Assembly: GCF_902459465.1 (NCBI RefSeq) | Contig: NC_047065.1 | Span: 10,044,001 to 10,108,000, forward strand | Origin: Asterias rubens | Taxonomy: Eukaryota | Length of the DNA: 64,000 nt | Direction: 5' to 3' | Translations under genes and position numbers: made by a program | Part shown: in pieces, positions 11,870-28,218 of the stretch | Layout of the letters: the number at the start of each line of letters is the position of its first letter | How positions within the stretch are numbered: the first letter of the stretch is position 1 | The notes under the pieces: generated by a model | Seen by the model: the letters and a program-made list of their open reading frames with translations, nothing else | Told to the model about the DNA's origin: nothing | Database searches by the model: none

Positions 11870-11913
11870 ATGGCCTTAGCTTTTGATCCAATCCGGACCT
11901 TCTTCAGAGGCAT
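11870..11913 (-). ncRNA. Minimal type I hammerhead ribozyme of the PLE terminal repeat (G12A, probably inactive)
   Basis: Minus strand ATGCCT-CTGAAGA-A-GGTCC ggatt GGATC-AAAA-GC-TA|AGGC: stem I GCCT/AGGC, CUGANGA core, stem II, GAAA changed to AAAA, palindromic stem III. Confidence 0.8.
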
Positions 11914-12615: not shown

Positions 12616-14454
12616 CCAGTGTTTATGTTGAGTCCAAAGGGTTTGACTGTCTTGAGTTGGTGGATCCAGTGTGATTTTCTACTCTTGCGATGTGTCATCA
12701 CCATTGCAAGCTTCAATCACCAGAAGTTCAACATCAATGACACTATGATTGGGGCTGTTGAAGTGGATAGAGACTGGGTACGGTTTCTTAGTCTTTATGG
12801 AAGAGACATGATTCGCTAAGCGAAGACTAAGTTTGGTCTTAGTCTCTCCCACATATTGTAGCCCACATCTCTTACATGATATTACATAGACTACATTAGA
12901 CGTGCTGCATTCAGAGTCGGTCTTGATGTTGTATGAAGAGCCAGTGGTATGACTCTTCACCTTAAGTGAGGGCTTAATGTGCAGACACGTTTTGCATTTG
13001 GAACGGGTACATTTGTGACAGCCCAGTATATCTGTCGGGGGTTGTGTTTGGACTATACCTGGGGGAAGTTTGGCCCTGACTAGTATGTCACCAAGGTTCT
13101 TAGGGCGGCGGAATGCAACCATGGGAACCTCAGGGATTGCTGAGTGTAACCTGCTGGAGGAGTGAAGTATAGGCATGTTATTATTGAGAATTGAGGGAAG
13201 TTTGGGTAATTTGGGGTGGAAGGTGGTGACCAAAGCAACTCTATTGGTAGGAGCTTTTTTAGCTCCTGTGTTAGTCAACAGAGTATGACGAGGTACGTTG
13301 AGAGCCCTGTTGATAGCAAGTTGGACCCTACGTTCGCTGTGTCCCCTAGATACAAGGTGTTTCCTTAGCTCTGATGAGCGCCTCTTGTACAGATACGCCT
13401 GATACGTAAGGCCTGACTGTAAGCAATTGCCTTCTTACAGTGACTAGGGTGACAGCTATTGGAGAGAAGGTACTGGTGGGTGTCGGTGGGTATACTGTAA
13501 ACATCTGTGACAAGGCCATTAGGAGACTTGGTTATTGTCACATCTAGAAAGTTCACACTGGTGAGAGATTGTTCGGTACTGAACTTTATGGTGGGGTGAA
13601 ATGAGTTGATATGGTCAATAAACTCATCCAAGCTGTCTTGGTCACCACACCAGATGGAGAAAATATCATCAATAAATCTCCACCAAACTAGTGGTCGGTT
13701 AGGGGCGGAGGACAGGAGTCTGTCCTCCAACTGAGACATGAATAGGTTGGCATATGAGGGTGCCATTTTGGTACCCATGGCAGTACCCTGTACCTGTAGA
13801 AAATGCCTGTCAGAAAATGTGAAATATTCTTCATTAGAATGTGGCTCATGAGTTCCTTAATATGACTCACTGAGGGGCGGGACTGATTACTAGCATTGAG
13901 GGCAGAGACACATGCACTCATGCCTTCATGATGGGGTATGTTAGTATACAGTGATGAAACATCAAAAGTAACCAAAATAGCAGAGTCGGGTACTTGGTGC
14001 TTGACCTTATCTAGTTTGTGGAGAAAGTCTTTGGTATCCTTGATGAAGGAAGGAATACGGCAGACTATAAGGGTTTGAGGAAGCTATCTACAAACTCAGA
14101 AATGCGCTCTGTGGGGCTACCATTCCCAGATACAATAGGTCTCCCCGGGTTATTGGGCTTGTGTATCTTAGGTAGAAGGTAGAACCTTGCTGTACGGGGG
14201 TCATGTGGGAGGAGATAGTTAAATGTATCTTTCTCGATACCATTGGCGTTATAAATCCTAACCAGGGTGTCACTGATATCTTGGGAGAAAGATTCAGTGG
14301 GATCAGAAGCACATTCAATGTAATGATCAGTGTTACTGAGCTGTCTAAGGCCCTCAGCAATGTAGCCATGTGTGTTCATGACTACAACTGCGGACCCCTT
14401 GTCAGCCCGTTTAATCACTATGTCTGGTGATTGGTAGTCTTTGTTCAGGACTCT

Positions 14455-14681
14455 CCTGGATTTGTAACAAGAAAGCGCGCTATCACCCCCAACGCGCTAT
14501 CAACCATATCAAACATAATGCGCGTGCGTAGGTTTCCCGGCCGCGCGCCCCTTTTTTTGGGGGGGGGGGAGATTTAACGAATGTGCCAAGACTCTCCTGT
14601 GATAGCGGTTCTCGGGTGATAGCGGTTCGTGGTTGATAGCGCGTTGGGGGTGATAGCGCGCCCTGTTGTGACAAATCCAGG
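14455..14681. mobile_element. MITE (CCTGGATTTG...CAAATCCAGG) inserted in the PLE ORF
   Basis: ~50-bp TIR including gcgcgctatcacccccaacgcgctatcaacc; target duplication GGTGATTGG at 14426-14434 and 14680-14688. Removing the insertion restores LRQSPDIVIKRADKG. Confidence 0.88.
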
Positions 14682-16611
14682 TGATTGGCGGAGTTGTGTC
14701 AGGGCGTGACGCTCATCTTGGGGGAGGTTATTGGGAGTAGGGGTACTGGGGGCATTAAGAACCTCGGAGTTAACCGAATTGATGTATGTCTATAGAGACA
14801 CATCTCGGTTCTTAGGGGGTACCCAAGTACTCTTTTCCCTGAAGCGGTTGCGGGGAATAGGTTGGGTCTCCACAGATGACTCGTCATCCATGGAGGGCTC
14901 TACATGAAAGTATTCACGTAGGCATAACCTACAATTGAATTGGGCCATGTCCTATTGGAAAAGAAGTTTGTTAGGTTCTCTGGGTGTGGGGCAAAACTTA
15001 AGACCCCTTGAGAGGAGTTTAACCTGTGGGTCAGTAAGGACCATGTCAGACAGGTTAACTACAGTATTGGTCTCTGGCGACCTAACAGTAGGAGGAGCAA
15101 TGGTGGCTCTCTTACTGTGGAAACGTCTATGGGTGTGTTTCTTATGGTTAGCCTGGACATTCATACGTTTCTTGTTCTGTGTGTCCATTAGGGTGGACCT
15201 TAAGTGTTTGACGTTACTTAGTATGGTATCTTGTAACTGTTCAAACCCTTCAATAGAACATGACTCCTGGAGTTGAGACTCAGTGTCTGTTATCTCAAGC
15301 AACTGGTTATCAATGAATTGTTGGCATTGATTTTCCAGCAACTTGATCAAACGGAAAGACGTATTAGTGAGTGTCTTGTTCCATTTCTTCAAAAAGGGTG
15401 GGACAAGGTCCCCAAAGGAAGGGGTACACTTGATCTGTAGGCTTTTGGGAATGATACGGGACAAATGATAAAAACGGTAGTTATCAAGATGTGACATGTA
15501 ACGGGTGTTCTTTTCCTTAAGTTTACGAAGCTTGCGGATAATGCACTTGGTGTCGGGAGCAAGTGCCATAGTGGATGGGGAAATACAGTCAAGGGGAAAT
15601 ATGTATAGGACGAAATAAAAAATATATAGAACGAAATATGAAATATATAGAACAAAAATAAATATATAGAACGAAAATAAATATAGAGAATGAAGTAAAA
15701 AACATATAGAACAAAAATAAATATATAGAACAAAAAATATATAGAACCTAACAAAAATATATAGAACGAAATAAAATATATATAGAATAAAATAAAGTAT
15801 AATTATATAGTATGACAAAATATTATAGAACAAAATACATATATACATATAACCAAATAAAAAATATATAGAACAAAACAGTAATATATGGAACGAAACA
15901 TTAAATAGAACGAAGCGCCCCCTTCGACGAATAAGGGCCAGGCCGCACAGTGCGGCCTCTTCGTTCTATATATTTTTGTTTCATTCATTTCTGTTCCGCG
16001 CTATTAGCGTAGGTGCATGAACATTAGCATAATAGCAGGAAGCGCCGCCCGCGGGACGGACCAGTATTTTAGACTTGAAATCAAGTCGTTAGACAACAGA
16101 GTCGTCGTGCACACTTCCTTACTGCTGATGATAAACGTTTAATTATCGATCGCTGTTATAAGGAGGGCTACACGACTGGACATAATAACTCAAAATGTTC
16201 AATGATCTTAGATTATCACACAGCCATAGACAATTTTCCCAATTTGGAGGAACAAACTGCAACTTAAATTCAGGCTGGTTTATGACGATTCAGTTCCAAG
16301 TGCAGCTGAAAGAAACATTTATTACAAAAATAATTGCAGATATGGGAGTGTTTTTTGAACATTGCCCTAACAAATTCACGGCTATTTCGGCCCGACGATT
16401 TACTATTTCGACCGCGGGTGATTTATTGTCGTTTTTAAAACGAAATACGTTAATGTTTTGTTGTTGCTGTTCACGGGTTCAAGTCAAGAGAGGGCGCTGT
16501 AACCAAACCCTATTTTCATAGTGCCCGCCCGCCCGCCCACAAAAAACGCGCGCACGATCACGACTAGATCTAGTTCATGACCATGTTTCACTGAGCCAGC
16601 CAGAATACAGA

Positions 16612-17953: not shown

Positions 17954-18070
17954 GTTCGTGCTACTAAAGTACTATGCTAATGTTCGTGCTACTAAAGTAC
18001 TATGCTAATGTTCGTGCTACTAAAGTACTATGCTAATGTCGTGCCGTGCAGCTATGCTAATGTTTGTGCT
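17954..18070 (+). repeat. 28-bp tandem repeat (tgttcgtgctactaaagtactatgctaa), degenerate, in the right foldback arm
   Basis: 2-3 near-exact copies plus degenerate tails. Confidence 0.75.
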
Positions 18071-18791
18071 ATTACGCTAATGTTGTACAACCCCTGGCCC
18101 TTATTCGTCGAAGGGGGCGCTTCGTTCTATTTATTTATGTTTCGTCCCATATATTTCTGTTTTGTTCTATATTATTTTTATATTGTTATTTCGTTATATT
18201 TCATTCTATATATATTTTATTTCACTCTATTATATATTTTTGTTACGTTCTATATATTTCTTTTTCGTTCTATATATTTATTTTCGTTCTATATATTTTT
18301 TATTTCGTTCTCAATATTTTTATTTCATTCTATATATATTTTATTTCGTTCTATATGTTTATTTTCATTCTATATATTTATTTTCGTTCTATATATTTCA
18401 TATTTCGTTCTATATATTTTTTGTTTCGTCCTATATATATTTATTTCGTTCTATATATATTGGTTTCATTCCATATATATTGGTGTCATTCTATAAACAT
18501 TGGTGTCGTAATAAAGTCATAAACGGCGCGGCGCCCCATACATATCCCTGCAGATAAATAACAAAGGAGATTAGTGTACTGCGGGTAGACTGTGCAGATT
18601 GGTGTATAAGCTTGGGTGAACAATTTGATGTTTGTTAAAATGAGTCTTGTTTCATTACTGCAAGCACAAAACCAATCGGAAACAGGGGTCTTCCATTTTG
18701 AATCTAATAAAGAGCCCAAACACAAGCTTTACGGCACAGACAGTTCATTGCATTGATGAGGGTGCAGTCATCCTTTAAGTCTAGCACTTAC

Positions 18792-19542: not shown

Positions 19543-20582
19543 CTGTTGAAGAAAAGAAAAAAGTACATTAATCTTTGAACATAATTGTAGAAGTGCTCTG
19601 CCCCCTTTCAATGAACAGTGTACCTTATCAAGAGAACAAATAACCTTTGTTTGAAGGCAGTATTTCTTATGCACTTTGCCTGTGACGTCACTTCTGCACC
19701 ATCCTAGTATAGTTATAGATAGCTGAATAAGGATTCCACCATTGAAGATTGAAGATTGAAGTAGACAAGTTGTTGAAAACCAGTGTTCTCACTTGTTGTA
19801 GAGAGAGGTTGCGTGACCCCGCAAAAAGTTCGTTGTGCGCGCTGGCGGCCATGTTGAGTGGTAACGCGTCGTCTGCTCGCAACAGCAGACGCACGTTTGT
19901 AACCGAGAAAGTTGGTTTTTCTCTGATAGACAAATATTTTGTGAAGGTCTGGTCGACTGGTCTCCAAACATTGAACTATTCTCAGCAGTGTCGTAGCCAG
20001 ATGTTATTAAATACCGTTACTCTGAGCGCATTTAAGTCCATTGATGCACCAAATTCGATGGGTGACGGAGGTAAAGGTGCACATCGAGGAAAATTTGCTC
20101 GTGAAAGTAATCAAACTTAGCAGTTTTACTGTTGAGGCCGCACTTATTGCGAAACATTATTTATTTTGTATGGACGTGCACATGGCTACCAACTACCTAC
20201 CACATCACGGTACCACCACTGTAGAAAACAAATTATTTTTGTTAAAATCGGCACTCTGGGATTTTAGATAAATGTTTTCGGCAATGGTGGTGCGGTATTT
20301 GGCTGGCCTCATCGGCACTCTGGTATATTTTAGATTCAACTATCTGAAGAGGGCGATTCACGTTGACAAAATGTCTTGGCATAGATTTGATTTATTTTGA
20401 GATGGTTTATTAATAATACAACAAAAATATTCTCGGCCAGAGGCCGAAAAACATTTTGTACATATCATGTACACATTTAAAAACTTCCAATATACAAAAG
20501 ACAAGATTGAAGAAAGCAAAGATGTCTTAAGCAAGTCAAAATTAAGTTTAAGAGAGTGAAATTAGAGAGAAAACAACGATAC

Positions 20583-20950
20583 AGGCAGTGGACACTATTG
20601 GTAATTACTCAAAATAATTATTACCATAAAACCTTACTTGGTAACAAGTAATGGGGAGCCGTTGATAGTATAAAACATTGTGAGAAACGGCTCCCTCTGA
20701 AGTAACGTAATTTTCGAGAAGTAATTTTTCACGAATTTGATTTCGAGAATTCAGATTTAGTATTTGAGGTCTCGAAATCAAGCATCTGAAAGCACACAAC
20801 TTGTTTCTTTATTGCTACCTCGCAACTTCGACGACCAATAAATTGAGCGCAACTTTTCACAGGTTTATTTTCAGCATAAAAAATATGTTGAGATACACCA
20901 AGTGAGAAGATTGGTCTTTGACAGTTACCAATAGTGTCCAGTGTCTTGAA
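20583..20950. mobile_element. TTAA (Kolobok-like) MITE
   Basis: AGGCAGTGGACACTATTGG...CCAATAGTGTCCAGTGTCT. Confidence 0.85.
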
Positions 20951-21011
20951 CACATAAATATTTGGGACTGGAATGGAAGTTCAAAACTTAAGTGTCATCT
21001 CAAAAGACTCT

Positions 21012-21401
21012 TTAAAGACAGTGGACACTACTATTGGTAGTTGTCAAAAATTAGTCTTCACAGTTGGTGTATCTCAACATATGCATAAACAAAACAACAA
21101 ACTTGTGAAAATTTTAGCTCAATCGGATGCGAAGCTGCGAGATATTAATGAAAGAAAAAACACCCTTGTCACACACAGATACGTGCGTTCGGATGCTTGA
21201 TTTCGAGACCTCAACTCTAAATCTGAGGTCTCGAAATCAAATTTATGGAAAATTACTTCATTCTCGAAAACTACATTACTTCAGAGGAGCCGTTTTTCAC
21301 AATGTTTTGAACTATCAACCTCTCCCCATTACTCGTTACCAAGTAAGGTTTTATGCTGATAATTATTTTGAGTAGATACCAATAGTGTCCACTCCCTTTA
21401 A
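21012..21401. mobile_element. TTAA (Kolobok-like) MITE, opposite orientation, ~35 bp from the Neto exon 4 donor
   Basis: TTAA at both ends; family internal sequence. Confidence 0.85.
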
Positions 21402-21435
21402 AAGGTTGACTGAATTTCAATTCTATGTTGTTTAC

Positions 21436-21569
21436 CTTTGACACATCTTCCACATCTATCTGCCATGTGCAGTCTATTGGAGCATGTGGATCTGTGTGAC
21501 GAATAAGATCTCTAGCTTCCTTGACTGAAAACGCTCCATCATACAAATTAGCAATATGGAAGAAACATT
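21436..21569 (-). CDS. Neto: Neto exon 4: start of CUB2 (ECFFHIANLYDGAFSVKEARDLIRHTDPHAPIDCTWQIDVEDVSK)
   Basis: Acceptor tttgtcccacAG, donor AAG|GTAAAC, phase 1->0; the IDCTW motif corresponds to the CUB DCxW motif. Confidence 0.9.
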
Positions 21570-21582
21570 CTGTGGGACAAAT

Positions 21583-22230
21583 GAGCAATGTGTAAGAAAC
21601 ATTCTCTAATACAACATTGAGCAATATGTAAGAAACATTCTCTAATATAACATTGAGCAATATGTAAGAAACTTTCTCTAATACAACATTGAGCAATATG
21701 TAAGAAACATTCTCTAATACAACATTGAGCATTATGTAAGAAACGTTCTCTAATACAACATTGAGCAATATGTAAGAAACATTCTCTAATATAACATTGA
21801 GCAATGTGTAAGAAACATTCTCTAATATAACATTGAGCAATATGTAAGAAACATTCTCTAATACAACATTGAGCAATATGTAAGAAACATTCTCTAATAC
21901 AACATTGAGCAATATGTAAGAAACATTCTCTAATACAACATTGAGCAATATGTAAGAAACATTCTCTAATACAACATTGAGCAATATGTAAGAAACATTC
22001 TCTAATATAACATTGAGCAATATGTAAGAAACATTCTCTAATACAACATTGAGCAATATGTAAGAAACATTCTCTAATATAACATTGAGCAATATGTAAG
22101 AAACATTCTCTAATACAACATTTAGCAATATGTAAGAAACATTCTCTAATACAACATTGAGCAATATGTAAGAAACGTTCTCTAATACAAAATTGAGCAA
22201 TATGTAAGAAACATTCTCTAATACAACATT
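21583..22230 (-). repeat. 18 x 36-bp minisatellite abutting the Neto exon 4 acceptor
   Basis: Unit gagcaatatgtaagaaacattctctaatacaacatt; (22231-21583)/36 = 18; degenerate copies extend to ~22310. Confidence 0.97.
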
Positions 22231-22325
22231 GAGCAATGTTGCAGAAACATGTTTCAATTGAAATGAGCAGTATTGCAGAAACATACAGAAACAAATGAGC
22301 AATATGGAAGGTTCTGTGTTTTAAT

Positions 22326-23843
22326 TAACGTCCGTCGATATATCGAAAATACTCAAAAACTCGATATTTTTTTGACATCGAAATCGCCGATGTCACTTTT
22401 ATAATCATATCGTAATATCGGATTTTCGATATATATCGAAAAATTTCGATATTTTGAAAATTTCGATGTTCCTAAATGATATCGAAAATACCAAAAGAGT
22501 GTCCGATTATTTAAAAGAAATCTGTGTTTGAAAAGCCGTCGTCGTTATGTAGTTTCATCATTTTGAGTTGCCCTATTAAATAAAATACGTTTTACAAGCA
22601 AGTATGTCTGCATGTTCTTTGTGTTTTCGCCATCAGCCGCCGGCCCGCCGCAGAAGTTCACGACCCCGCGGCGAGCGCACTGTAAAACCTCAAAAGAAAC
22701 CGCCGCTGCTGCCCCAGCCTATCGGCTGTTTAAGATGCAACTTCCCATTGTGCATGTGATCAAAATCAATGCGTCTTCATCACAGCATTATTGACTTTGC
22801 AAAAATACCCCGCAAAAACTTCCCCGAATCAACAAGACAAACAAAACAAGGAAGAAAACAATCTTACAATAATCTTTCTATCAATCCATGGTATCGTAAT
22901 GGCGTCATTTTGGTCAAATAAAGCCTACACGTTGTGTTGTTTTCGGTGAACAAGCTAACATTTCCGAGGAACTATATGCTTCGCAGACCACGCTGTCGGC
23001 GGCTATTGCGTGCGTACCAGCGAAGACTATGCTGTTGTACGGTTTAAGCGTGCACACCAGCGTGTATGGTTATTGCAATTCGGGGGGAAAACCCGTTTGC
23101 CCAAGCATGCGCAGACACATGCAGTCTTTGGTCAAGGCGGTATCGCGTGATGCACTGCGTTATTTCGACAATAGAGGGCGTTCTAGCATTCAATGTTTCT
23201 TGCCTTGGTTATAGAATGCAAAGTAAAAAGACTACGAGCCTTTATTGGAGACTATGTGACTGCATGCTGCGTGCGTTGTATATTGTGATCGCTGAGTGGT
23301 AGGTCTGTGTTTTGCGGGACTTTCTAGTGATTTTTTTTCGACGATTATCTCAACCATTTTCAACCGTAAAGGTAGTCCGCGCACCCGTCGGACAACTTGA
23401 TTGACACTTCTACGTCAATGCATCGGCAACTGACACCTAAATGTCGGCGAGTCACGCAGCTCACAAAGGCTCTGTGTCATTTTGAGACGGCCAATCATGG
23501 CCAATCACGAATCGAGAATTGTGGTGAGCGTTCACCAATTGGCCAAGCCAGCGGTAGCGGCGATCATACTTTGTTGTAAAACCAGAAATAATCGGGGCGG
23601 GACTACGCAATCTGAAATTGTTTGGACTACAAACAAGTTCGGGGGATCAGACAAAAACAAGTTGAAATGTAACCCTATTAAACTGTCAGTCTATGGTATA
23701 AATATTTCTACCTCCATGAGTATACCAAGTGCTGTTTTTAGGCTTCCATCTTGCGCGCGGGAAATACTCGATATATCGAGTATACTCGATATTAAATTTT
23801 CGATATATCGATAATGGGAAAAAACCGACATCGACGGACGTTA
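22326..23843. mobile_element. hAT-like non-autonomous DNA transposon
   Basis: TIR TAACGTCCGTCGAT / ATCGACGGACGTTA; 8-bp TSD GTTTTAAT at 22318-22325 and 23844-23851; many subterminal CGATA/TATCG motifs; no transposase seen. Confidence 0.88.
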
Positions 23844-24746
23844 GTTTTAATCATGACAATATGGACCGGAGCTCAAAGAAAAAAAACTTGTAATAACTTT
23901 AAGAGCACTGTAGAATCCCTTGAGCAAAAGTTTTTATATTTTGAATATATAAACATGTAAATGAATATCAAGGACAGTAGATTTCTGAAATGTCAAGTCA
24001 TAATAACCTGCATGTAAGAATGGTTGTCAAGTTGGTACATCAATCTTAAATTAATGGCTGTATAATTCTTTCAACATTTCTAACAATCTCGAATGCTAAA
24101 TTCCTTGGTTTTATGATTCAATGAATTCTGGATCGGGCAAAACCGATGCAATAAAAACAGCGACAAACCAGCCATTTATAGGAAGTGCAAGAAGGTGCAC
24201 TATGGATAGCACTTGAGTCAAAGACTCTTTCAGTGCCATTTTTTTTTATAAGCTAAATTTACGTGAATGAAAAAAGAAAAGAAAACAAACCTGAATGCAT
24301 AAAATAGTTTTAAAAACATTGAAACTATTTACAATTACCGATGTTATATTTTACTCTGGTAATATCTCAAAGGTTCAGATTTTAAATTGGGATATCAGAC
24401 AGGGGGGATGGCATTTGTCAATGTTCTTTTCAAATTGTTGATGATTCTTAAAAAATCAAAAGCGACATTTTTGGAAACGTGGATATTTAAAGAAAGGGAC
24501 AACAAAATTTGTTTCCCTGAAATAATTTTGTTATTCATTATTCAGTAATTTTCTCCAGTCAAAATGTATGCTGCCTATAAAATTTCCAAATATTTGAGCA
24601 AATAGGACTTCGGCTTACATCATGTCTAAGATTCATTTGTTCCAAAATAAGGGCTTGACTGAAACAGCCAATTTTGTGTCGTTTTTTTGTAACTTTTTAA
24701 CAAAAATTTGAATCTTCAATTGAAACTAAAAACCAACTTTTGCTTT

Positions 24747-25133
24747 ATAAAGGCAGTGGACTATTGGTTATTACTCCAAATAATTATTAGCTTAAAACCT
24801 TTCTTGGTGACGAGTAATGGGGAGAGGTTGATAGTATAAAACATTGTGAGAAACGGCTCTCTCTGAAGTGTCATAGTTTTTGAGAAAGAAGTAATTTCCA
24901 CGAATTTGATTTCATGACCTCAGATTAAGAACTTGAATTCTCGAAATCAACCATCTAAACGCACATAAATTCGTGTGACAAAGGTGTTTTTTCTTTCATT
25001 ACTATCTCGCAACTTCGATGACCAATTGAGCTCAAATTTTCACAGGTTTGTTATTTTATGCATATGTTGAGATACACCAACTGTGAATGCTAGTCTTTGA
25101 CAATTACCAATATAAGTGTCCACTGCCTTTTAA
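24747..25133. mobile_element. TTAA (Kolobok-like) MITE
   Basis: Family TIRs and internal sequence. Confidence 0.85.
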
Positions 25134-25325
25134 CGGTTGGCAACCCCAGTCCATGACAGGGAGATGATAGAAAGGGAGATCTAGTTCCATTGATACGATC
25201 AGCAAGGTCGATGCTTACCTTCAGGTCGAGGTGTCTCGGTTGGTGGAGCTGATGGATAACAAACAGAACAGTCAGTTATACGTATTTTAATAGAAATATG
25301 TGTAGTTATAATAAAGTGTTTTTTT

Positions 25326-25600
25326 TTAAGACACTGGACACTTTTTTAGTAATTGTCAAAGACCAGTATTCTCACTTGGTGTAATCCCAACATATGCAGG
25401 AAATAACAAACTTAACAACAAATTTGGAACAAATTTTCGTCAAAGTTGCGAGAGAATAATGGAAGAACTTGTCACACAGAGTTGTGTGCTTTCAGATGCT
25501 TGATTTCGGGACCTCAAAATCTAATTCTGGAAAATTTAAATTCATGGAAAATTTCTTCTTTCTCGAAAACTATTTACTTAAGAGCGGTCTCTGCATGGAC
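25326..25600. mobile_element. Truncated TTAA MITE
   Basis: ttaagacactggacac end plus decayed internal sequence. Confidence 0.7.
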
Positions 25601-27369
25601 TCCTTCCCGTAAAGGTTTCGTGATCAACTACACAAAGTGTCTACCCTTTTATTGCAATTTTTAAATGTCGTAATTATATACACATAGTAATTTGTTGTTT
25701 ATTAATTCCCCCTCTTGTAAAAAAAAAAAAAACCTTTGAAACACAACCCTTTTCCCCTTATAAATATGTTGTATGCATTAATGCACAGTAGATACCGCAC
25801 TGGAAAAAAAAGGGGGGGGGGTGCAGGAAACAACAAACATTTCTTAACCGTTTTGGTGATGTCTTTTTCCCTGGTGTAAAAAGGGCATTTTGAAAGAGTA
25901 TAATACTGACTACTGTGTTGCATATTTCTTCAAACTCTGATGCGATGCGGGTATCCGTTTTTATCGGAGTACAATAATATCCAGATCCAGATCCAGAACT
26001 GATATGTCTTGTAACAAAATTAAATTAGGCCTATCTTTGCCCAAATAAAAAAAACGCCTAAGTTCTACAGTTCAAATTTAAAAGGTGTTTTTGTTCTTTT
26101 GTTTCAATCATCGATTTGATATCTGTTATTGGCCTTTAGATTGCACCACATTGCATAGACCCCATGCCGTAAATGCATTGCGCTCTCCCCTGCAGTGCAT
26201 GCTCCATCCTTGACAGATTTGACCACCACAAGTGTGAAAGACGCAGAAACTGCACAGTATAACGGTCTCCCGTGTTAAAGTTTTTTGAGATAATTTTAGT
26301 ATTCACTTTCTGTTTAGTTGTATATTTAATTAGTATGCATAATGTTGCCATACCATACATGTATATTGCCAGGAAGACAGTCCTCAACTCGCCTTGTCCA
26401 TGTATTCGTGTACAAATCATAGCACTGCCCAAACCTAAAGCCATGGCGGCGCAGCCACAGCCCCACAGACCAATCAACCCCTTCCCCATGGTTTATTTTA
26501 TTATTTTTTAAACGTGTTCCCAAAAGTGGTCATTTTCGTACTTCTCAACATATCATGGATACGAGGTTGCAGACCAGTGTGCAGCTCTTGCGGGGTTGAA
26601 ACAACATAACGGCTCTATCGCAACTATCGCGAGACTGCTGTATGCTCTCCGCGAGATTTCTGTACACGACGAAACTGCTCTTATAGGCCCTGTTTGATAA
26701 CAAGGCTTCGGCTTTGGATTCGGCTTCAGGATCCGTCCTCTCGTCTGAAGCCCTGAGAACGTACACAAAGCACGCGCAATTATTGTCAAAACAACCGCGG
26801 GGCCAAGCTAGCCTAAGCCGAATCTGGAGCCGCAGCCTAACATTCGAAAAGGGGCCATAGTCATGAGAGCAGCATTCTCGCGCGCACTGTTTAGCGAGAT
26901 AGTTCTAGGAGAGCCGTTTCATTATCACGGCAACAGCCATCAACGACCTGTCCACAAAGTACCAAGAAGACGGAGAAACACTACGTGACACCAATGGACT
27001 TCCGTAGTAGCAACAAGATCACTGTATAGCTCTTTGAATTTGGCAATGTACGGATAACATTTCATGATGAATTCATGTACCCCCCCCCCACCCCCTAAAA
27101 AACATGAATTATTGAATAAATAATTTTTGGGTAAAATACGCAGTTCAAAGTCACTCGTTTTTTCCTCGGTAATTATTGATCAGGAGCCGCGGCCGTCCGA
27201 AGTCATTACCTAAATAGGCAGTTACTTTCAAACTCTGGCGTTGCAATTGCGAGCACCTTTTCTTTGTTTTGGGGTTGTTTGTGTAACAGAAAGAAGAATC
27301 AGGTTCGGGTTTTTGTGGACTTAGTTTTGGATATTCAAGTTATAATTATTATATTTGTATATTTATTAC

Positions 27370-27618
27370 CTGGGATGAATCGAAAATATGCCTCAAATCC
27401 AGTATACTCCAGGTCTTCATCAGCTACGAACAAAATCCAGAGGTAGCGGCTGGTGGTGGTGAAATTAATGGGTGCTTTGTCCCCGCAATATTTGCCAATT
27501 AATGGCGAGAAGCCGTACCTTCCATCTCGAACCTCAAGGTAGTCGTACACACACTCATCATGATACTCAATCTCGAAATCAGCATTGAAGGTTACCTCAA
27601 CTACCTCGTTCTCTCCCG
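27370..27618 (-). CDS. Neto: Neto exon 3: CUB1 core (AGENEVVEVTFNADFEIEYHDECVYDYLEVRDGRYGFSPLIGKYCG...LEYTGFEAYFRFIP)
   Basis: The DYLEVRDGxxGFSPLIGKYCG motif is characteristic of Neto CUB1; AG/GT boundaries; phase 1-1; 249 nt. Confidence 0.95.
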
Positions 27619-28218
27619 CTAAAATGCAATCAAAATACCGTTATAGATAATCAGGGGGGTGATTGTAAAAAGATCTTTATCTGTCAAAGTGATTTAATAT
27701 ATGCAATATAATGCATGGTCTTGATGAGTTTATGCATTTTGTTCGCTGCAACTCCACAGACATCCTTTGCCAATTTGTCATTGAGCGAAATCGTGCTCTT
27801 GGTATGCAAAGGAATATAACTAATTGAATGATCGGTATTTATAAGACCATGTGTTTTTATTACTCTATCAACTTCATGGCTGACAGGTGTGGGAGTCTTT
27901 TTGAGTGGAACTGACAAGACTTAAGACGTTATAAGAAGGTTATTTAGTTTGATATGCAAACACATATCGAAAGAGCCATAACATTGTTTCTAGAAAAGAA
28001 ATGGAAAAATTCCTACAATTTTGTACAATAAGGGATATTGTTTTACTGAACAACCACCAAGGAATTATTTTGAACGATAAATCGATTCGAAGAAAGAAAG
28101 AAAGGTGTTGAAAAAGTGTGGAACAGCTACCTCCATTTTATACAACCGTGGTAAGTTTCTTATGTAAGCCTATATAAGCATATTGTACGACGTATATCGG
28201 TTGTCAATTCAAATACTC

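What the first reader, a model, noticed from the sequence alone, without database searches (positions are those of the whole stretch)
21546..22310. Minisatellite of 18 in-frame copies of the Neto exon 4 splice acceptor: a possible repeat-length-tunable CUB1-CUB2 linker
Seen: the minus-strand unit (..TGTTGTATTAG|AGAATGTTTCTTACATATTGCTCAA) is a copy of the exon's own 5' end (CAG|AATGTTTCTTCCATATTGCTAATTTGTAT). Each unit has a branch-point-like CTTAC ~24 nt before a TAG. Every TAG lies exactly 36n nt upstream of the true acceptor, and that frame is stop-free (ORF 21271..22302). Use of any TAG would therefore add n x 12 aa (ENVSYILLNVVL; each unit has an N-V-S glycosylation sequon) between CUB1 and CUB2 without breaking the protein. 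The neighbouring GAG acceptors (+2 nt) instead hit a stop at 21548-21550. Inference: this is either a VNTR-encoded set of alternative acceptors giving variable-length linkers, or a decoy array that must be suppressed. The pyrimidine tracts in the units are weak, so usage may be low.
Basis: partly seen in the sequence, partly recalled or inferred. Interest (0 to 1): 0.8.

Follow-up and report, generated by a model that had tools for sequence, protein, structure and literature searches.

The report
Silent splice-acceptor minisatellite in starfish Neto
An intron of the common starfish's Neto-like gene holds about 19 tandem 36-base copies of the gene's own intron/exon junction, but the few transcripts available use only the true splice site. 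It is therefore a new example of the known "mirage" minisatellites, not a demonstrated tunable protein linker.

Summary
A 36-bp minisatellite (TRF 21541-22237, 19.5 copies, 94% match) lies directly upstream of the first CUB2 exon (21436-21569, minus strand) of the Asterias rubens NETO2-like gene. It is unique in the 417.6-Mb genome. Eighteen TAG pseudo-acceptors lie exactly 36n nt upstream of the true CAG, and that frame is open.

The "tunable linker" reading is not supported.
- RefSeq models in A. rubens and A. amurensis use the true acceptor, and no protein in the database carries the repeat peptide spliced to upstream exons.
- An own-species transcript contig stops aligning exactly at 21569, and no assembled RNA covers the array.
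- The open frame is expected by chance. Variants run 9 nonsynonymous to 2 synonymous, and the peptide is strongly hydrophobic.

The array is orthologous in A. amurensis (24.6 copies) and absent in Patiria, so it arose from a 34-nt junction duplication in the Asterias lineage.

It matches the "mirage" minisatellites of amphioxus and mirrors the donor-side arrays of F7 and IFI6. This scan also noted arrays of the same kind at MRPS18A, ACSS2, grin1 and HIAT1 in this genome; I did not check those. Rare or tissue-specific use of the pseudo-sites remains untested.

The parts
21436..21569 (-). First CUB2 exon of the NETO2-like gene, in phase 1.
   Evidence: tblastn of P0001 on the window; sequence; an X16 transcript contig covers 21455-21569 and stops aligning at 21569.
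21570..21605 (-). Unit 1, the proximal unit. It carries the authentic branch-point-like CTTAC, the TTTGTCCCAC tract and the true CAG acceptor. It differs from the consensus at 9 of 36 positions, all but one in its 3' part.
   Evidence: Unit map; the orthologous unit in A. amurensis differs from it at only one position.
21606..22217 (-). Units 2-18: 17 near-consensus 36-bp units (0-2 mismatches). Each ends in TTAGAG, that is, a TAG pseudo-acceptor in frame plus a GAG out of frame.
22218..22253 (-). Unit 19, the distal unit, divergent in its 5' half (6 mismatches). It ends in the 18th TAG.
   Evidence: the same variant unit closes the array in A. amurensis (unit 24).
22254..22290 (-). Degenerate older unit or units (ATGTTTCTGCAATACTGCTCATTTCAATTGA-like).
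22291..22318 (-). Distal pseudo-junction: CACAG followed by AA and CTTCCATATTGCTCATTTGT. This is a relic copy of the authentic acceptor plus exon start, with 19 of 20 bases matching the exon over the 20-mer.
   Evidence: also present in A. amurensis.
25219..25248 (-). 30-nt microexon (phase 1 to phase 1) encoding APPTETPRPE. It is the real, conserved CUB1-CUB2 linker, and its donor at 25218 is the one spliced to 21569.
   Evidence: P0001 sequence; DNA with cag|...|gtaagc; tblastn; the linker is conserved in Patiria and Acanthaster.
27371..27620 (-). It ends ..RFIP plus G, in phase 1.

Best explanation
This is a lineage-specific intronic 'mirage' minisatellite in the Asterias rubens NETO2-like gene.

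Origin. A 34-nt segment spanning the 3' splice site (CCCACAG) and the first 27 nt of the CUB2 exon was tandemly duplicated in an ancestor of Asterias, after the split from Patiria. The upstream copies became intronic. One derived 36-nt variant was then amplified by unequal exchange or slippage to 19.5 copies in A. rubens and 24.6 in A. amurensis. The interior of the array turns over in concert while its edges stay fixed.

Splicing. In the amplified unit the acceptor homologue has decayed from CCCACAG to ATTAGAG: the C-rich tract is lost and CAG has become GAG. A TAG 2 nt upstream arose as a by-product. The spliceosome uses only the exon-proximal, intact site. The branch point must lie in the last 34 nt, probably the CTTAC at -24, because that stretch is the only AG-free zone.

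Consequence. The array contributes no protein sequence. Its open frame follows from a period divisible by 3 and a unit that happens to lack stops in 2 of 3 frames.

Shown: anatomy, uniqueness, orthology and copy-number difference, derivation from the exon, use of the canonical site in gene models and in one transcript contig, and lack of coding constraint.

Inferred: the duplication and expansion mechanism, the reason the true site wins, and neutrality.
For: - Array anatomy and uniqueness.
- The exon start is ancestral. ECFFH is conserved in Patiria, Acanthaster and, more loosely, Amphiura. The Patiria junction ..ttacag|AGTGCTTCTTCCAT has no tandem repeat upstream.
- The distal flank keeps a relic CACAG plus exon-start copy, and the proximal spacing is 34 nt.
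- The A. amurensis locus L012 has the orthologous array with the same consensus, the same end units, 23 TAG sites against 18, and species-specific interior variants.
- RefSeq proteins of both species read RFIP-APPTETPRPE-ECFFH with no repeat insert, and the 90% cluster holds no insert isoform.
- X16, own species, covers exons only and has zero depth on the unique intron stretches. One of its contigs aligns to 21455-21569, stops exactly at the true acceptor with 29 further letters that do not match the array, and shows zero depth across 21655-22254.
- A protein search with units plus exon found only a genomic DNA contig.
- Eleven variant types split 9 nonsynonymous to 2 synonymous, against a neutral expectation of 75% nonsynonymous. 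Only 6 of 108 possible substitutions make a stop, so about 0.6 stops are expected among 11 variant types.
- The unit peptide has GRAVY +1.32; the real linker has -1.75.
- Precedents in which such arrays leave splicing undisturbed: PMC3087553, PMC3902484, PMC1557585.
Against: - RNA evidence is thin. It rests on one low-depth (3.8) contig from a run whose RNA label is a guess. The letters of its 29-nt overhang could not be read.
- The two raw-read RNA runs, from a relative, had no reads on the gene's exons, so rare junctions were never tested.
- By crude pyrimidine count the TAG pseudo-sites (12/20) are barely weaker than the true site (14/20) and equal to one genuine acceptor of this gene. Each has a correctly spaced branch-point-like motif, so they look competent.
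- The TAG frame is open in both species.
- Neutrality is inferred, not measured. No within-species length data were obtained.
Confidence: 0.8

Rival explanations
1. The array is a functional set of alternative 3' splice sites. Use of the n-th TAG inserts n x 12 aa (ENVSYILLNVVL, with an N-V-S sequon) between the linker microexon and CUB2. That would give Neto isoforms whose length depends on repeat number.
For: - Eighteen TAGs (23 in A. amurensis) lie exactly in frame, and the frame is open in both species.
- Each has a CTTAC about 24 nt upstream.
- Its pyrimidine content (12/20) falls within the range of the gene's real acceptors.
- In-frame products would escape NMD.
- There is a donor-side precedent: the IFI6 6-16 minisatellite, where the two proximal pseudo-sites are used (PMC1557585).
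Against: - No gene model, cluster member or assembled contig shows it.
- Variants look unconstrained and include L>P.
- The peptide is as hydrophobic as a membrane segment, which is implausible as an extracellular inter-CUB linker.
- A conserved Pro-rich linker exon already exists.
- An open frame is expected by chance.
- The array is absent in Patiria, where the protein is otherwise conserved.
Confidence: 0.04
2. The array is never spliced into mRNA but acts in cis on splicing or expression. It would be a sink of decoy branch-point/U2AF sites, or of other RNA-binding-protein motifs, that slows or tunes recognition of the CUB2 exon in a length-dependent way. Human intronic VNTRs next to exons, such as ABCA7, behave like this.
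For: - The pseudo-sites look nearly competent and sit within 36-650 nt of the true site.
- The array has been retained, with an identical consensus, in two species.
- VNTR length affects splicing of flanking exons in ABCA7 (PMC5954066).
- Tandem repeats are widely associated with splicing variation (PMC10078293, listed, not read).
Against: - No data here show any effect.
- Models in both species give the same exon structure despite a 5-unit difference.
- An identical consensus is what concerted evolution gives without selection.
- The amphioxus mirages are reported not to interfere with splicing. In F7, only the authentic donor is used physiologically and the pseudo-sites do not compete with it.
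Confidence: 0.13
3. The array is an assembly artefact, or its length is an artefact.
For: An ENA metagenome contig of A. rubens DNA (L015) shows only 4 units. DNA runs hold at most 0.43 of the sampled words of the stretch.
Against: Two independent chromosome-scale assemblies of two species carry it with the same flanks. Contigs of a relative's DNA run cover the exon, unit 1 and array words. L015 is a k141 short-read contig, so the short array is more likely a collapse than a real allele.
Confidence: 0.01

Closest known systems
'Mirage' minisatellites of amphioxus (Adh3, globins BflGb6 and BflGb9, troponin C, PGBD5). Sources: Ebner et al. 2010, PMC3087553; Pavelitz et al. 2013, PMC3902484; the term comes from Canestro et al. 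2002, as cited there.
   Same: - Both are tandem duplications of an intron/exon boundary, with the authentic junction as the terminal unit.
- BflGb6 duplicates the 3' end of an intron plus the 5' part of the exon, as here.
- Many units keep AG/GT signals, yet regular splicing is not disturbed.
- Length is unstable, evolution inside the cluster is concerted, and the cluster edges are excluded from homogenisation.
   Different: - This one is in an echinoderm, not a cephalochordate.
- The unit is 36 bp, within the Adh3 range of 10-72 bp but shorter than the 150-160 bp globin units.
- Copy number is higher (19-25).
- Length difference is shown only between species here, not between haplotypes or somatic cells.
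- The pseudo-acceptors have diverged from the true one (ATTAGAG against CCCACAG).
Donor-side exon-boundary minisatellites of human genes: F7 IVS7 (37 bp x 5-9), IFI6/6-16 (25 pseudo-donors), CBS IVS13, LMNB2 and PDGF intron 4 (Borensztajn et al. 2006, PMC1557585). ABCA7 intron 18 VNTR (PMC5954066).
   Same: Both are minisatellites whose end unit spans an exon boundary, so the splice site is reiterated in the intron. In F7, LMNB2 and PDGF only the authentic, exon-proximal site is used. A period near 36-37 bp is shared with F7.
   Different: - Those arrays reiterate 5' splice sites downstream of the exon. This one reiterates a 3' splice site, with a branch-point-like motif, upstream of it.
- In F7 the pseudo-sites are identical to the true site and selection is by 5'-to-3' scanning. 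Here the copies are degenerate, and no scanning experiment exists.
- In IFI6 and CBS two pseudo-sites are used. Here none was seen.
NAGNAG and other short-range tandem acceptors
   Same: Both have closely spaced alternative AGs created by local duplication. In-frame use would add residues without a frameshift.
   Different: The TAG and GAG here are 2 nt apart, not 3, so they are not NAGNAG. The in-frame series has a 36-nt step, and each site has its own branch-point-like motif. No use was observed.

Membership tests
Mirage minisatellite (tandem duplication of an intron/exon boundary) | Head-to-tail tandem array of minisatellite-size units | tested here: met
   TRF: period 36, 19.5 copies, 94% matches, 0% indels; 17 matches against 0 expected.
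Mirage minisatellite (tandem duplication of an intron/exon boundary) | The unit is a copy of the gene's own splice site plus adjoining exon sequence, and the authentic junction is the terminal unit | tested here: met
   - Unit 1 contains the true CAG and runs into the exon.
- The unit matches the exon's first ~27 nt.
- The distal relic keeps CACAG plus exon start.
- The exon start is ancestral, since it is present in Patiria without an array.
Mirage minisatellite (tandem duplication of an intron/exon boundary) | Length instability (copy number differs between alleles, individuals or lineages) | tested here: inconclusive
   Between species the feature is met: 19.5 copies in A. rubens against 24.6 in A. 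amurensis. Within the species it was not tested. The 4-unit contig L015 is probably an assembly collapse.
Mirage minisatellite (tandem duplication of an intron/exon boundary) | Concerted evolution inside the array, with edge units excluded from homogenisation | tested here: met
   The proximal unit 1 and the distal variant unit are shared by both species. Interior variants are species-specific: G30A x5 in A. rubens, A15T x7 and T18A x6 in A. amurensis.
Mirage minisatellite (tandem duplication of an intron/exon boundary) | Regular splicing is not disturbed and only the authentic site appears in mRNA | tested here: inconclusive
   RefSeq models of two species and one own-species contig use 21569, and no array sequence appears in assembled RNA. 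Depth was low, and the raw reads did not cover the gene.
Minisatellite providing alternative splice sites (IFI6 6-16 type) | Pseudo-sites of the array are used in transcripts, giving in-frame length isoforms | tested here: not met
   No such isoform was found in the protein collection, its 90% cluster or the transcript contigs. This negative is weak for rare isoforms.
Coding tandem repeat (VNTR inside an exon) | The repeat lies within the mature coding sequence and evolves under coding constraint | tested here: not met
   The array is intronic in the models of both species. Variants split 9 nonsynonymous to 2 synonymous against a neutral 77:25, and the open frame is expected by chance.
Dispersed repeat or transposon-borne satellite | The unit recurs at other loci of the genome | tested here: not met
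   All 17 pattern matches at 3 mismatches or fewer, and the only BLAST match, lie at this locus.

The most novel reading that the evidence does not exclude
In some tissue or stage, for example neurons, the exon-proximal TAG pseudo-acceptors are used at a low level. That would give Neto isoforms with one or a few 12-aa hydrophobic, N-glycosylatable inserts between the linker microexon and CUB2, and the available repertoire would differ between species and alleles.

A wider version: acceptor-boundary minisatellites are recurrent in this starfish genome. The scan's unchecked notes also list MRPS18A, ACSS2, grin1 and HIAT1. As in amphioxus, this would point to a splice-site-linked mutational process that seeds new exons or introns.
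Probability: 0.05. Interest if true: 0.65.

Novelty: new member of a known kind. Interest (0 to 1): 0.3.

Why it matters
In itself it is a curiosity. It is a clean, datable example (absent in Patiria, present with different length in two Asterias species) of a minisatellite born from a 3' splice site. That extends the "mirage" class from amphioxus to echinoderms.

It is a natural test-bed for 3' splice-site choice. Between 18 and 23 near-competent branch-point plus AG modules are ignored in favour of the exon-proximal one. This is the acceptor-side mirror of the F7 IVS7 model used to study 5' splice-site scanning.

If several such arrays really exist in this genome, as the scan's unchecked notes suggest, the mechanism that seeds them at acceptors would deserve study, as would their proposed role in gaining introns and exons.

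For annotation, it warns that the 349-codon open frame here is not coding. It also shows that the real CUB1-CUB2 linker is a 30-nt microexon that is easily missed.

Tried and rejected
- The raw RNA reads of two 2026 runs (X37, X38, a relative of the window's species) gave no reads on either exon. The direct test for rare junctions therefore failed, and only one read-laying run was allowed. One read pair per run fell inside the array, which is too few to interpret.
- The 29 overhanging letters of the X16 contig could not be displayed. Their identity with the microexon is inferred only from length and from the failure to match unit 1.
- The word shares of DNA runs (0.29-0.43) could reflect array polymorphism, but they cannot be interpreted for a tandem repeat.
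- P0002 matched only the transposon-derived part of the open frame downstream of the exon and is irrelevant.
- P0005 and P0006 are the next exon, not the array.
- P0014/L015 is a genomic contig with 4 units, probably collapsed. It is not a spliced product, because it runs on into the downstream intron.
- The genomic loci of P0004 and of the Acanthaster protein P0008 were not on record. The age of the array within Forcipulatida could therefore not be narrowed.
- MaxEnt-type splice scoring was not available. With only 8 acceptors in the gene I used pyrimidine counts alone.
- I found no published acceptor-side case outside amphioxus in two literature searches. One search failed on syntax. Canestro et al. 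2002 is not held.
- I considered and dropped three readings: a transposon-internal satellite (the unit is unique to this locus), a gene on the plus strand (none), and a coding repeat (see the membership test).

Full report
**What is there.**
- On the minus strand the window carries a Neto-like gene with the architecture CUB-CUB-LDLa-TM. Its exons match the RefSeq protein "neuropilin and tolloid-like protein 2 [Asterias rubens]" (P0001, XP_033626898.1) at 93-100% identity.
- The genome has 417.6 Mb in 150 contigs, and the window is C4:10044001-10108000.
- Directly upstream of the exon that starts CUB2 (21436-21569), Tandem Repeats Finder reports one array at 21541-22237: period 36, 19.5 copies, 94% matches, no indels.
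- Seventeen units match the consensus within 3 mismatches, against none in 100 shuffles.
- A BLAST search and a 3-mismatch pattern search of the whole genome find the unit only here. It is therefore not a dispersed or transposon-borne satellite.

- Listing every AG upstream of the exon gives 18 TAG sites at exactly 36n nt (n = 1-18) from the true CAG| at 21569. Each is followed 2 nt later by a GAG.
- TAG, rather than the homologous GAG, is in register because the last unit is 34 nt from the exon, not 36.
- The intron is phase 1. A TAG site would therefore read (G)AG AAT GTT.. = ENVSYILLNVVL per unit. That frame is open over 21274-22320, 349 codons.
- The GAG frame ends at TAA 21548-21550.
- CTTAC lies about 24 nt before each TAG.
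- All of this is confirmed.

- The RefSeq proteins of A. rubens and A. amurensis read ..RFIP-APPTETPRPE-ECFFHIAN...
- The ten extra residues come from a 30-nt microexon at 25219-25248, flanked by cag| and |gtaagc.
- The donor spliced to 21569 is therefore 25218, not 27370, and the CUB2 exon is the sixth coding exon.
- A Pro-rich AP....P.P(E/Q) linker is conserved in Patiria and Acanthaster. The gene thus already has a dedicated CUB1-CUB2 linker.
- The phase is unchanged, so the frame logic survives.

**Origin.**
- The exon start is ancestral. ECFFH is conserved in Patiria and Acanthaster, and as ECHF in the brittle star Amphiura.
- The Patiria junction reads ttacag|AGTGCTTCTTCCAT with no tandem repeat in the intron.
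- In A. rubens the far end of the array keeps a relic CACAG, then AA, then CTTCCATATTGCTCATTTGT. This matches the real junction (CACAG|AATGTTTCTTCCATATTGCTAATTTGT) apart from a small deletion.
- Unit 1 plus the exon show the primordial 34-nt period.
- The first event was therefore a tandem duplication of about 34 nt spanning the acceptor and the first 27 exon bases. A 36-nt derivative was amplified later.
- In that derivative the acceptor homologue is ATTAGAG instead of CCCACAG. The C-rich tract is lost and CAG has become GAG. The in-frame TAG is a side product 2 nt upstream.

**Comparison with A. amurensis.**
- The locus L012, fetched through protein P0003, has the orthologous array with identical flanks and an identical 36-nt consensus. 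It has 24.6 copies, that is, 23 TAG sites.
- The proximal unit 1 and the distal variant unit are shared.
- The interior differs: G30A in five A. rubens units, A15T in seven and T18A in six A. amurensis units.
- This is the usual picture of minisatellite turnover with fixed edges.
- Contigs of a DNA run of a relative (X9) also cover the exon, the acceptor, unit 1 and array words.

**Is it used?**
- The only read-laying run gave three results.
  - Run X16, own species, has zero depth on the unique intron stretches and depth on the exons, so it behaves as RNA. One 343-nt contig aligns to 21455-21569, stops exactly at the true acceptor, and carries 29 more letters that do not match unit 1.
  - X16 has zero depth over 21655-22254.
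  - The two raw-read RNA runs, from a relative, have no reads on either exon. Rare junctions could therefore not be tested.
- The protein collection holds no isoform with the repeat peptide.
  - A search with the 349-aa frame found only P0001, through the exon, and an irrelevant transposon match.
  - The 90% cluster of P0001 contains only insert-free proteins.
  - A search with five units plus the exon found only P0014. That is a genomic contig which runs on into the downstream intron and holds 4 units, most likely a short-read collapse.

**Is the open frame meaningful?**
- Two of the unit's three frames lack stops, and the period is divisible by 3.
- Only 6 of 108 single substitutions in the unit create a stop. 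The roughly 11 variant types seen in the two species would thus give about 0.6 stops by chance.
- The variants split 9 nonsynonymous (including L>P and N>K, the latter removing the sequon) to 2 synonymous. The neutral expectation is 77:25.
- The unit peptide has GRAVY +1.32, like a membrane segment. The real linker has -1.75.
- Nothing indicates coding constraint.

**Why the true site wins (inferred).**
- By pyrimidine count in -23..-4 the TAG pseudo-sites (12/20) are only slightly weaker than the true site (14/20). They equal one genuine acceptor of this gene, so they are plausible decoys.
- The true site keeps TTTGTCCCAC and CAG. It is preceded by the only AG-free stretch (34 nt), which holds a CTTAC at -24. 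It is also the site nearest the exon's donor, which exon definition favours. These points follow from established knowledge of 3' splice-site recognition and were not tested here.

**What is known.**
- Minisatellites whose end unit spans an exon boundary are described on the donor side in human F7 IVS7, IFI6 (6-16), CBS, LMNB2 and PDGF. Use is restricted to the authentic site or the most proximal sites (PMC1557585). ABCA7 is another donor-side case (PMC5954066).
[quoted passage not shown] They show length instability, concerted evolution with fixed edges, and no disturbance of splicing (PMC3087553, PMC3902484).
Further unchecked notes describe arrays of the same kind at grin1, ACSS2 and HIAT1 in this genome.
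- The present array meets the anatomical and evolutionary features of a mirage. The splicing feature is met as far as the thin RNA data go.

**Verdict.**
- The tunable-linker interpretation is not supported.
- It is a new member of a known kind, of modest interest. It could serve as a natural model for 3' splice-site choice, and possibly as one instance of a recurrent phenomenon in this genome.

Noticed in passing
window 25219-25248 (minus): A 30-nt phase-1 microexon encodes APPTETPRPE, the Pro-rich CUB1-CUB2 linker. It lies in a short unique stretch between SINE-like repeats, and the linker is conserved in Patiria and Acanthaster. It is easy to miss when reading ORFs by eye.
   Followed up: yes
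window 22326-23843: A 1,518-bp insertion is present in A. rubens and absent at the orthologous site of A. amurensis. It has 14-nt perfect terminal inverted repeats (TAACGTCCGTCGAT) and an 8-bp target duplication (ATTAAAAC), so it looks like a non-autonomous hAT-type element. It is multi-copy and transcribed in the RNA runs. It inserted right at the distal edge of the array: its 8-bp target duplication overlaps the first base of the relic acceptor CACAG.
   Followed up: partly
window 24655-25654 and 21010-21415, 20580-20950, many others: A very abundant SINE/MITE-like repeat with the motif AAAGGCACTGGACAC and palindromic ATTTCGAGACCTCA..TGAGGTCTCGAAAT ends. It reaches depths of 10^5-10^6 in contigs of both RNA and DNA runs, and many reads join opposite strands. 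It gives spurious ORFs such as ..FETSNSKLEVSKSNSWK...
   Followed up: no
window 12680-15270 (minus): Open frames of a reverse-transcriptase-bearing retroelement lie inside the large intron before the last Neto exon. They are followed at 14955-15965 and 17996-18554 by low-complexity TTT/TAT-rich tandem repeats that are open in several frames.
   Followed up: no
L015 (ENA metagenome contig ERZ1764473 k141_17918998): An A. rubens genomic contig in a metagenome assembly carries the same locus with only 4 repeat units. This is either a short-read collapse or a short allele, and the tools here could not tell which.
   Followed up: partly
window 21855-22054, RNA runs X37/X38: One read pair per run, with the first mate on the minus strand, maps inside the array although the gene's exons have no reads. 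This may be background pre-mRNA, DNA carry-over or antisense transcription. There are too few reads to interpret.
   Followed up: no
window 11870-11913: An earlier scan note (s1-150532) reports a hammerhead-ribozyme-like motif on the Neto pre-mRNA strand in the last intron. I did not examine it.
   Followed up: no
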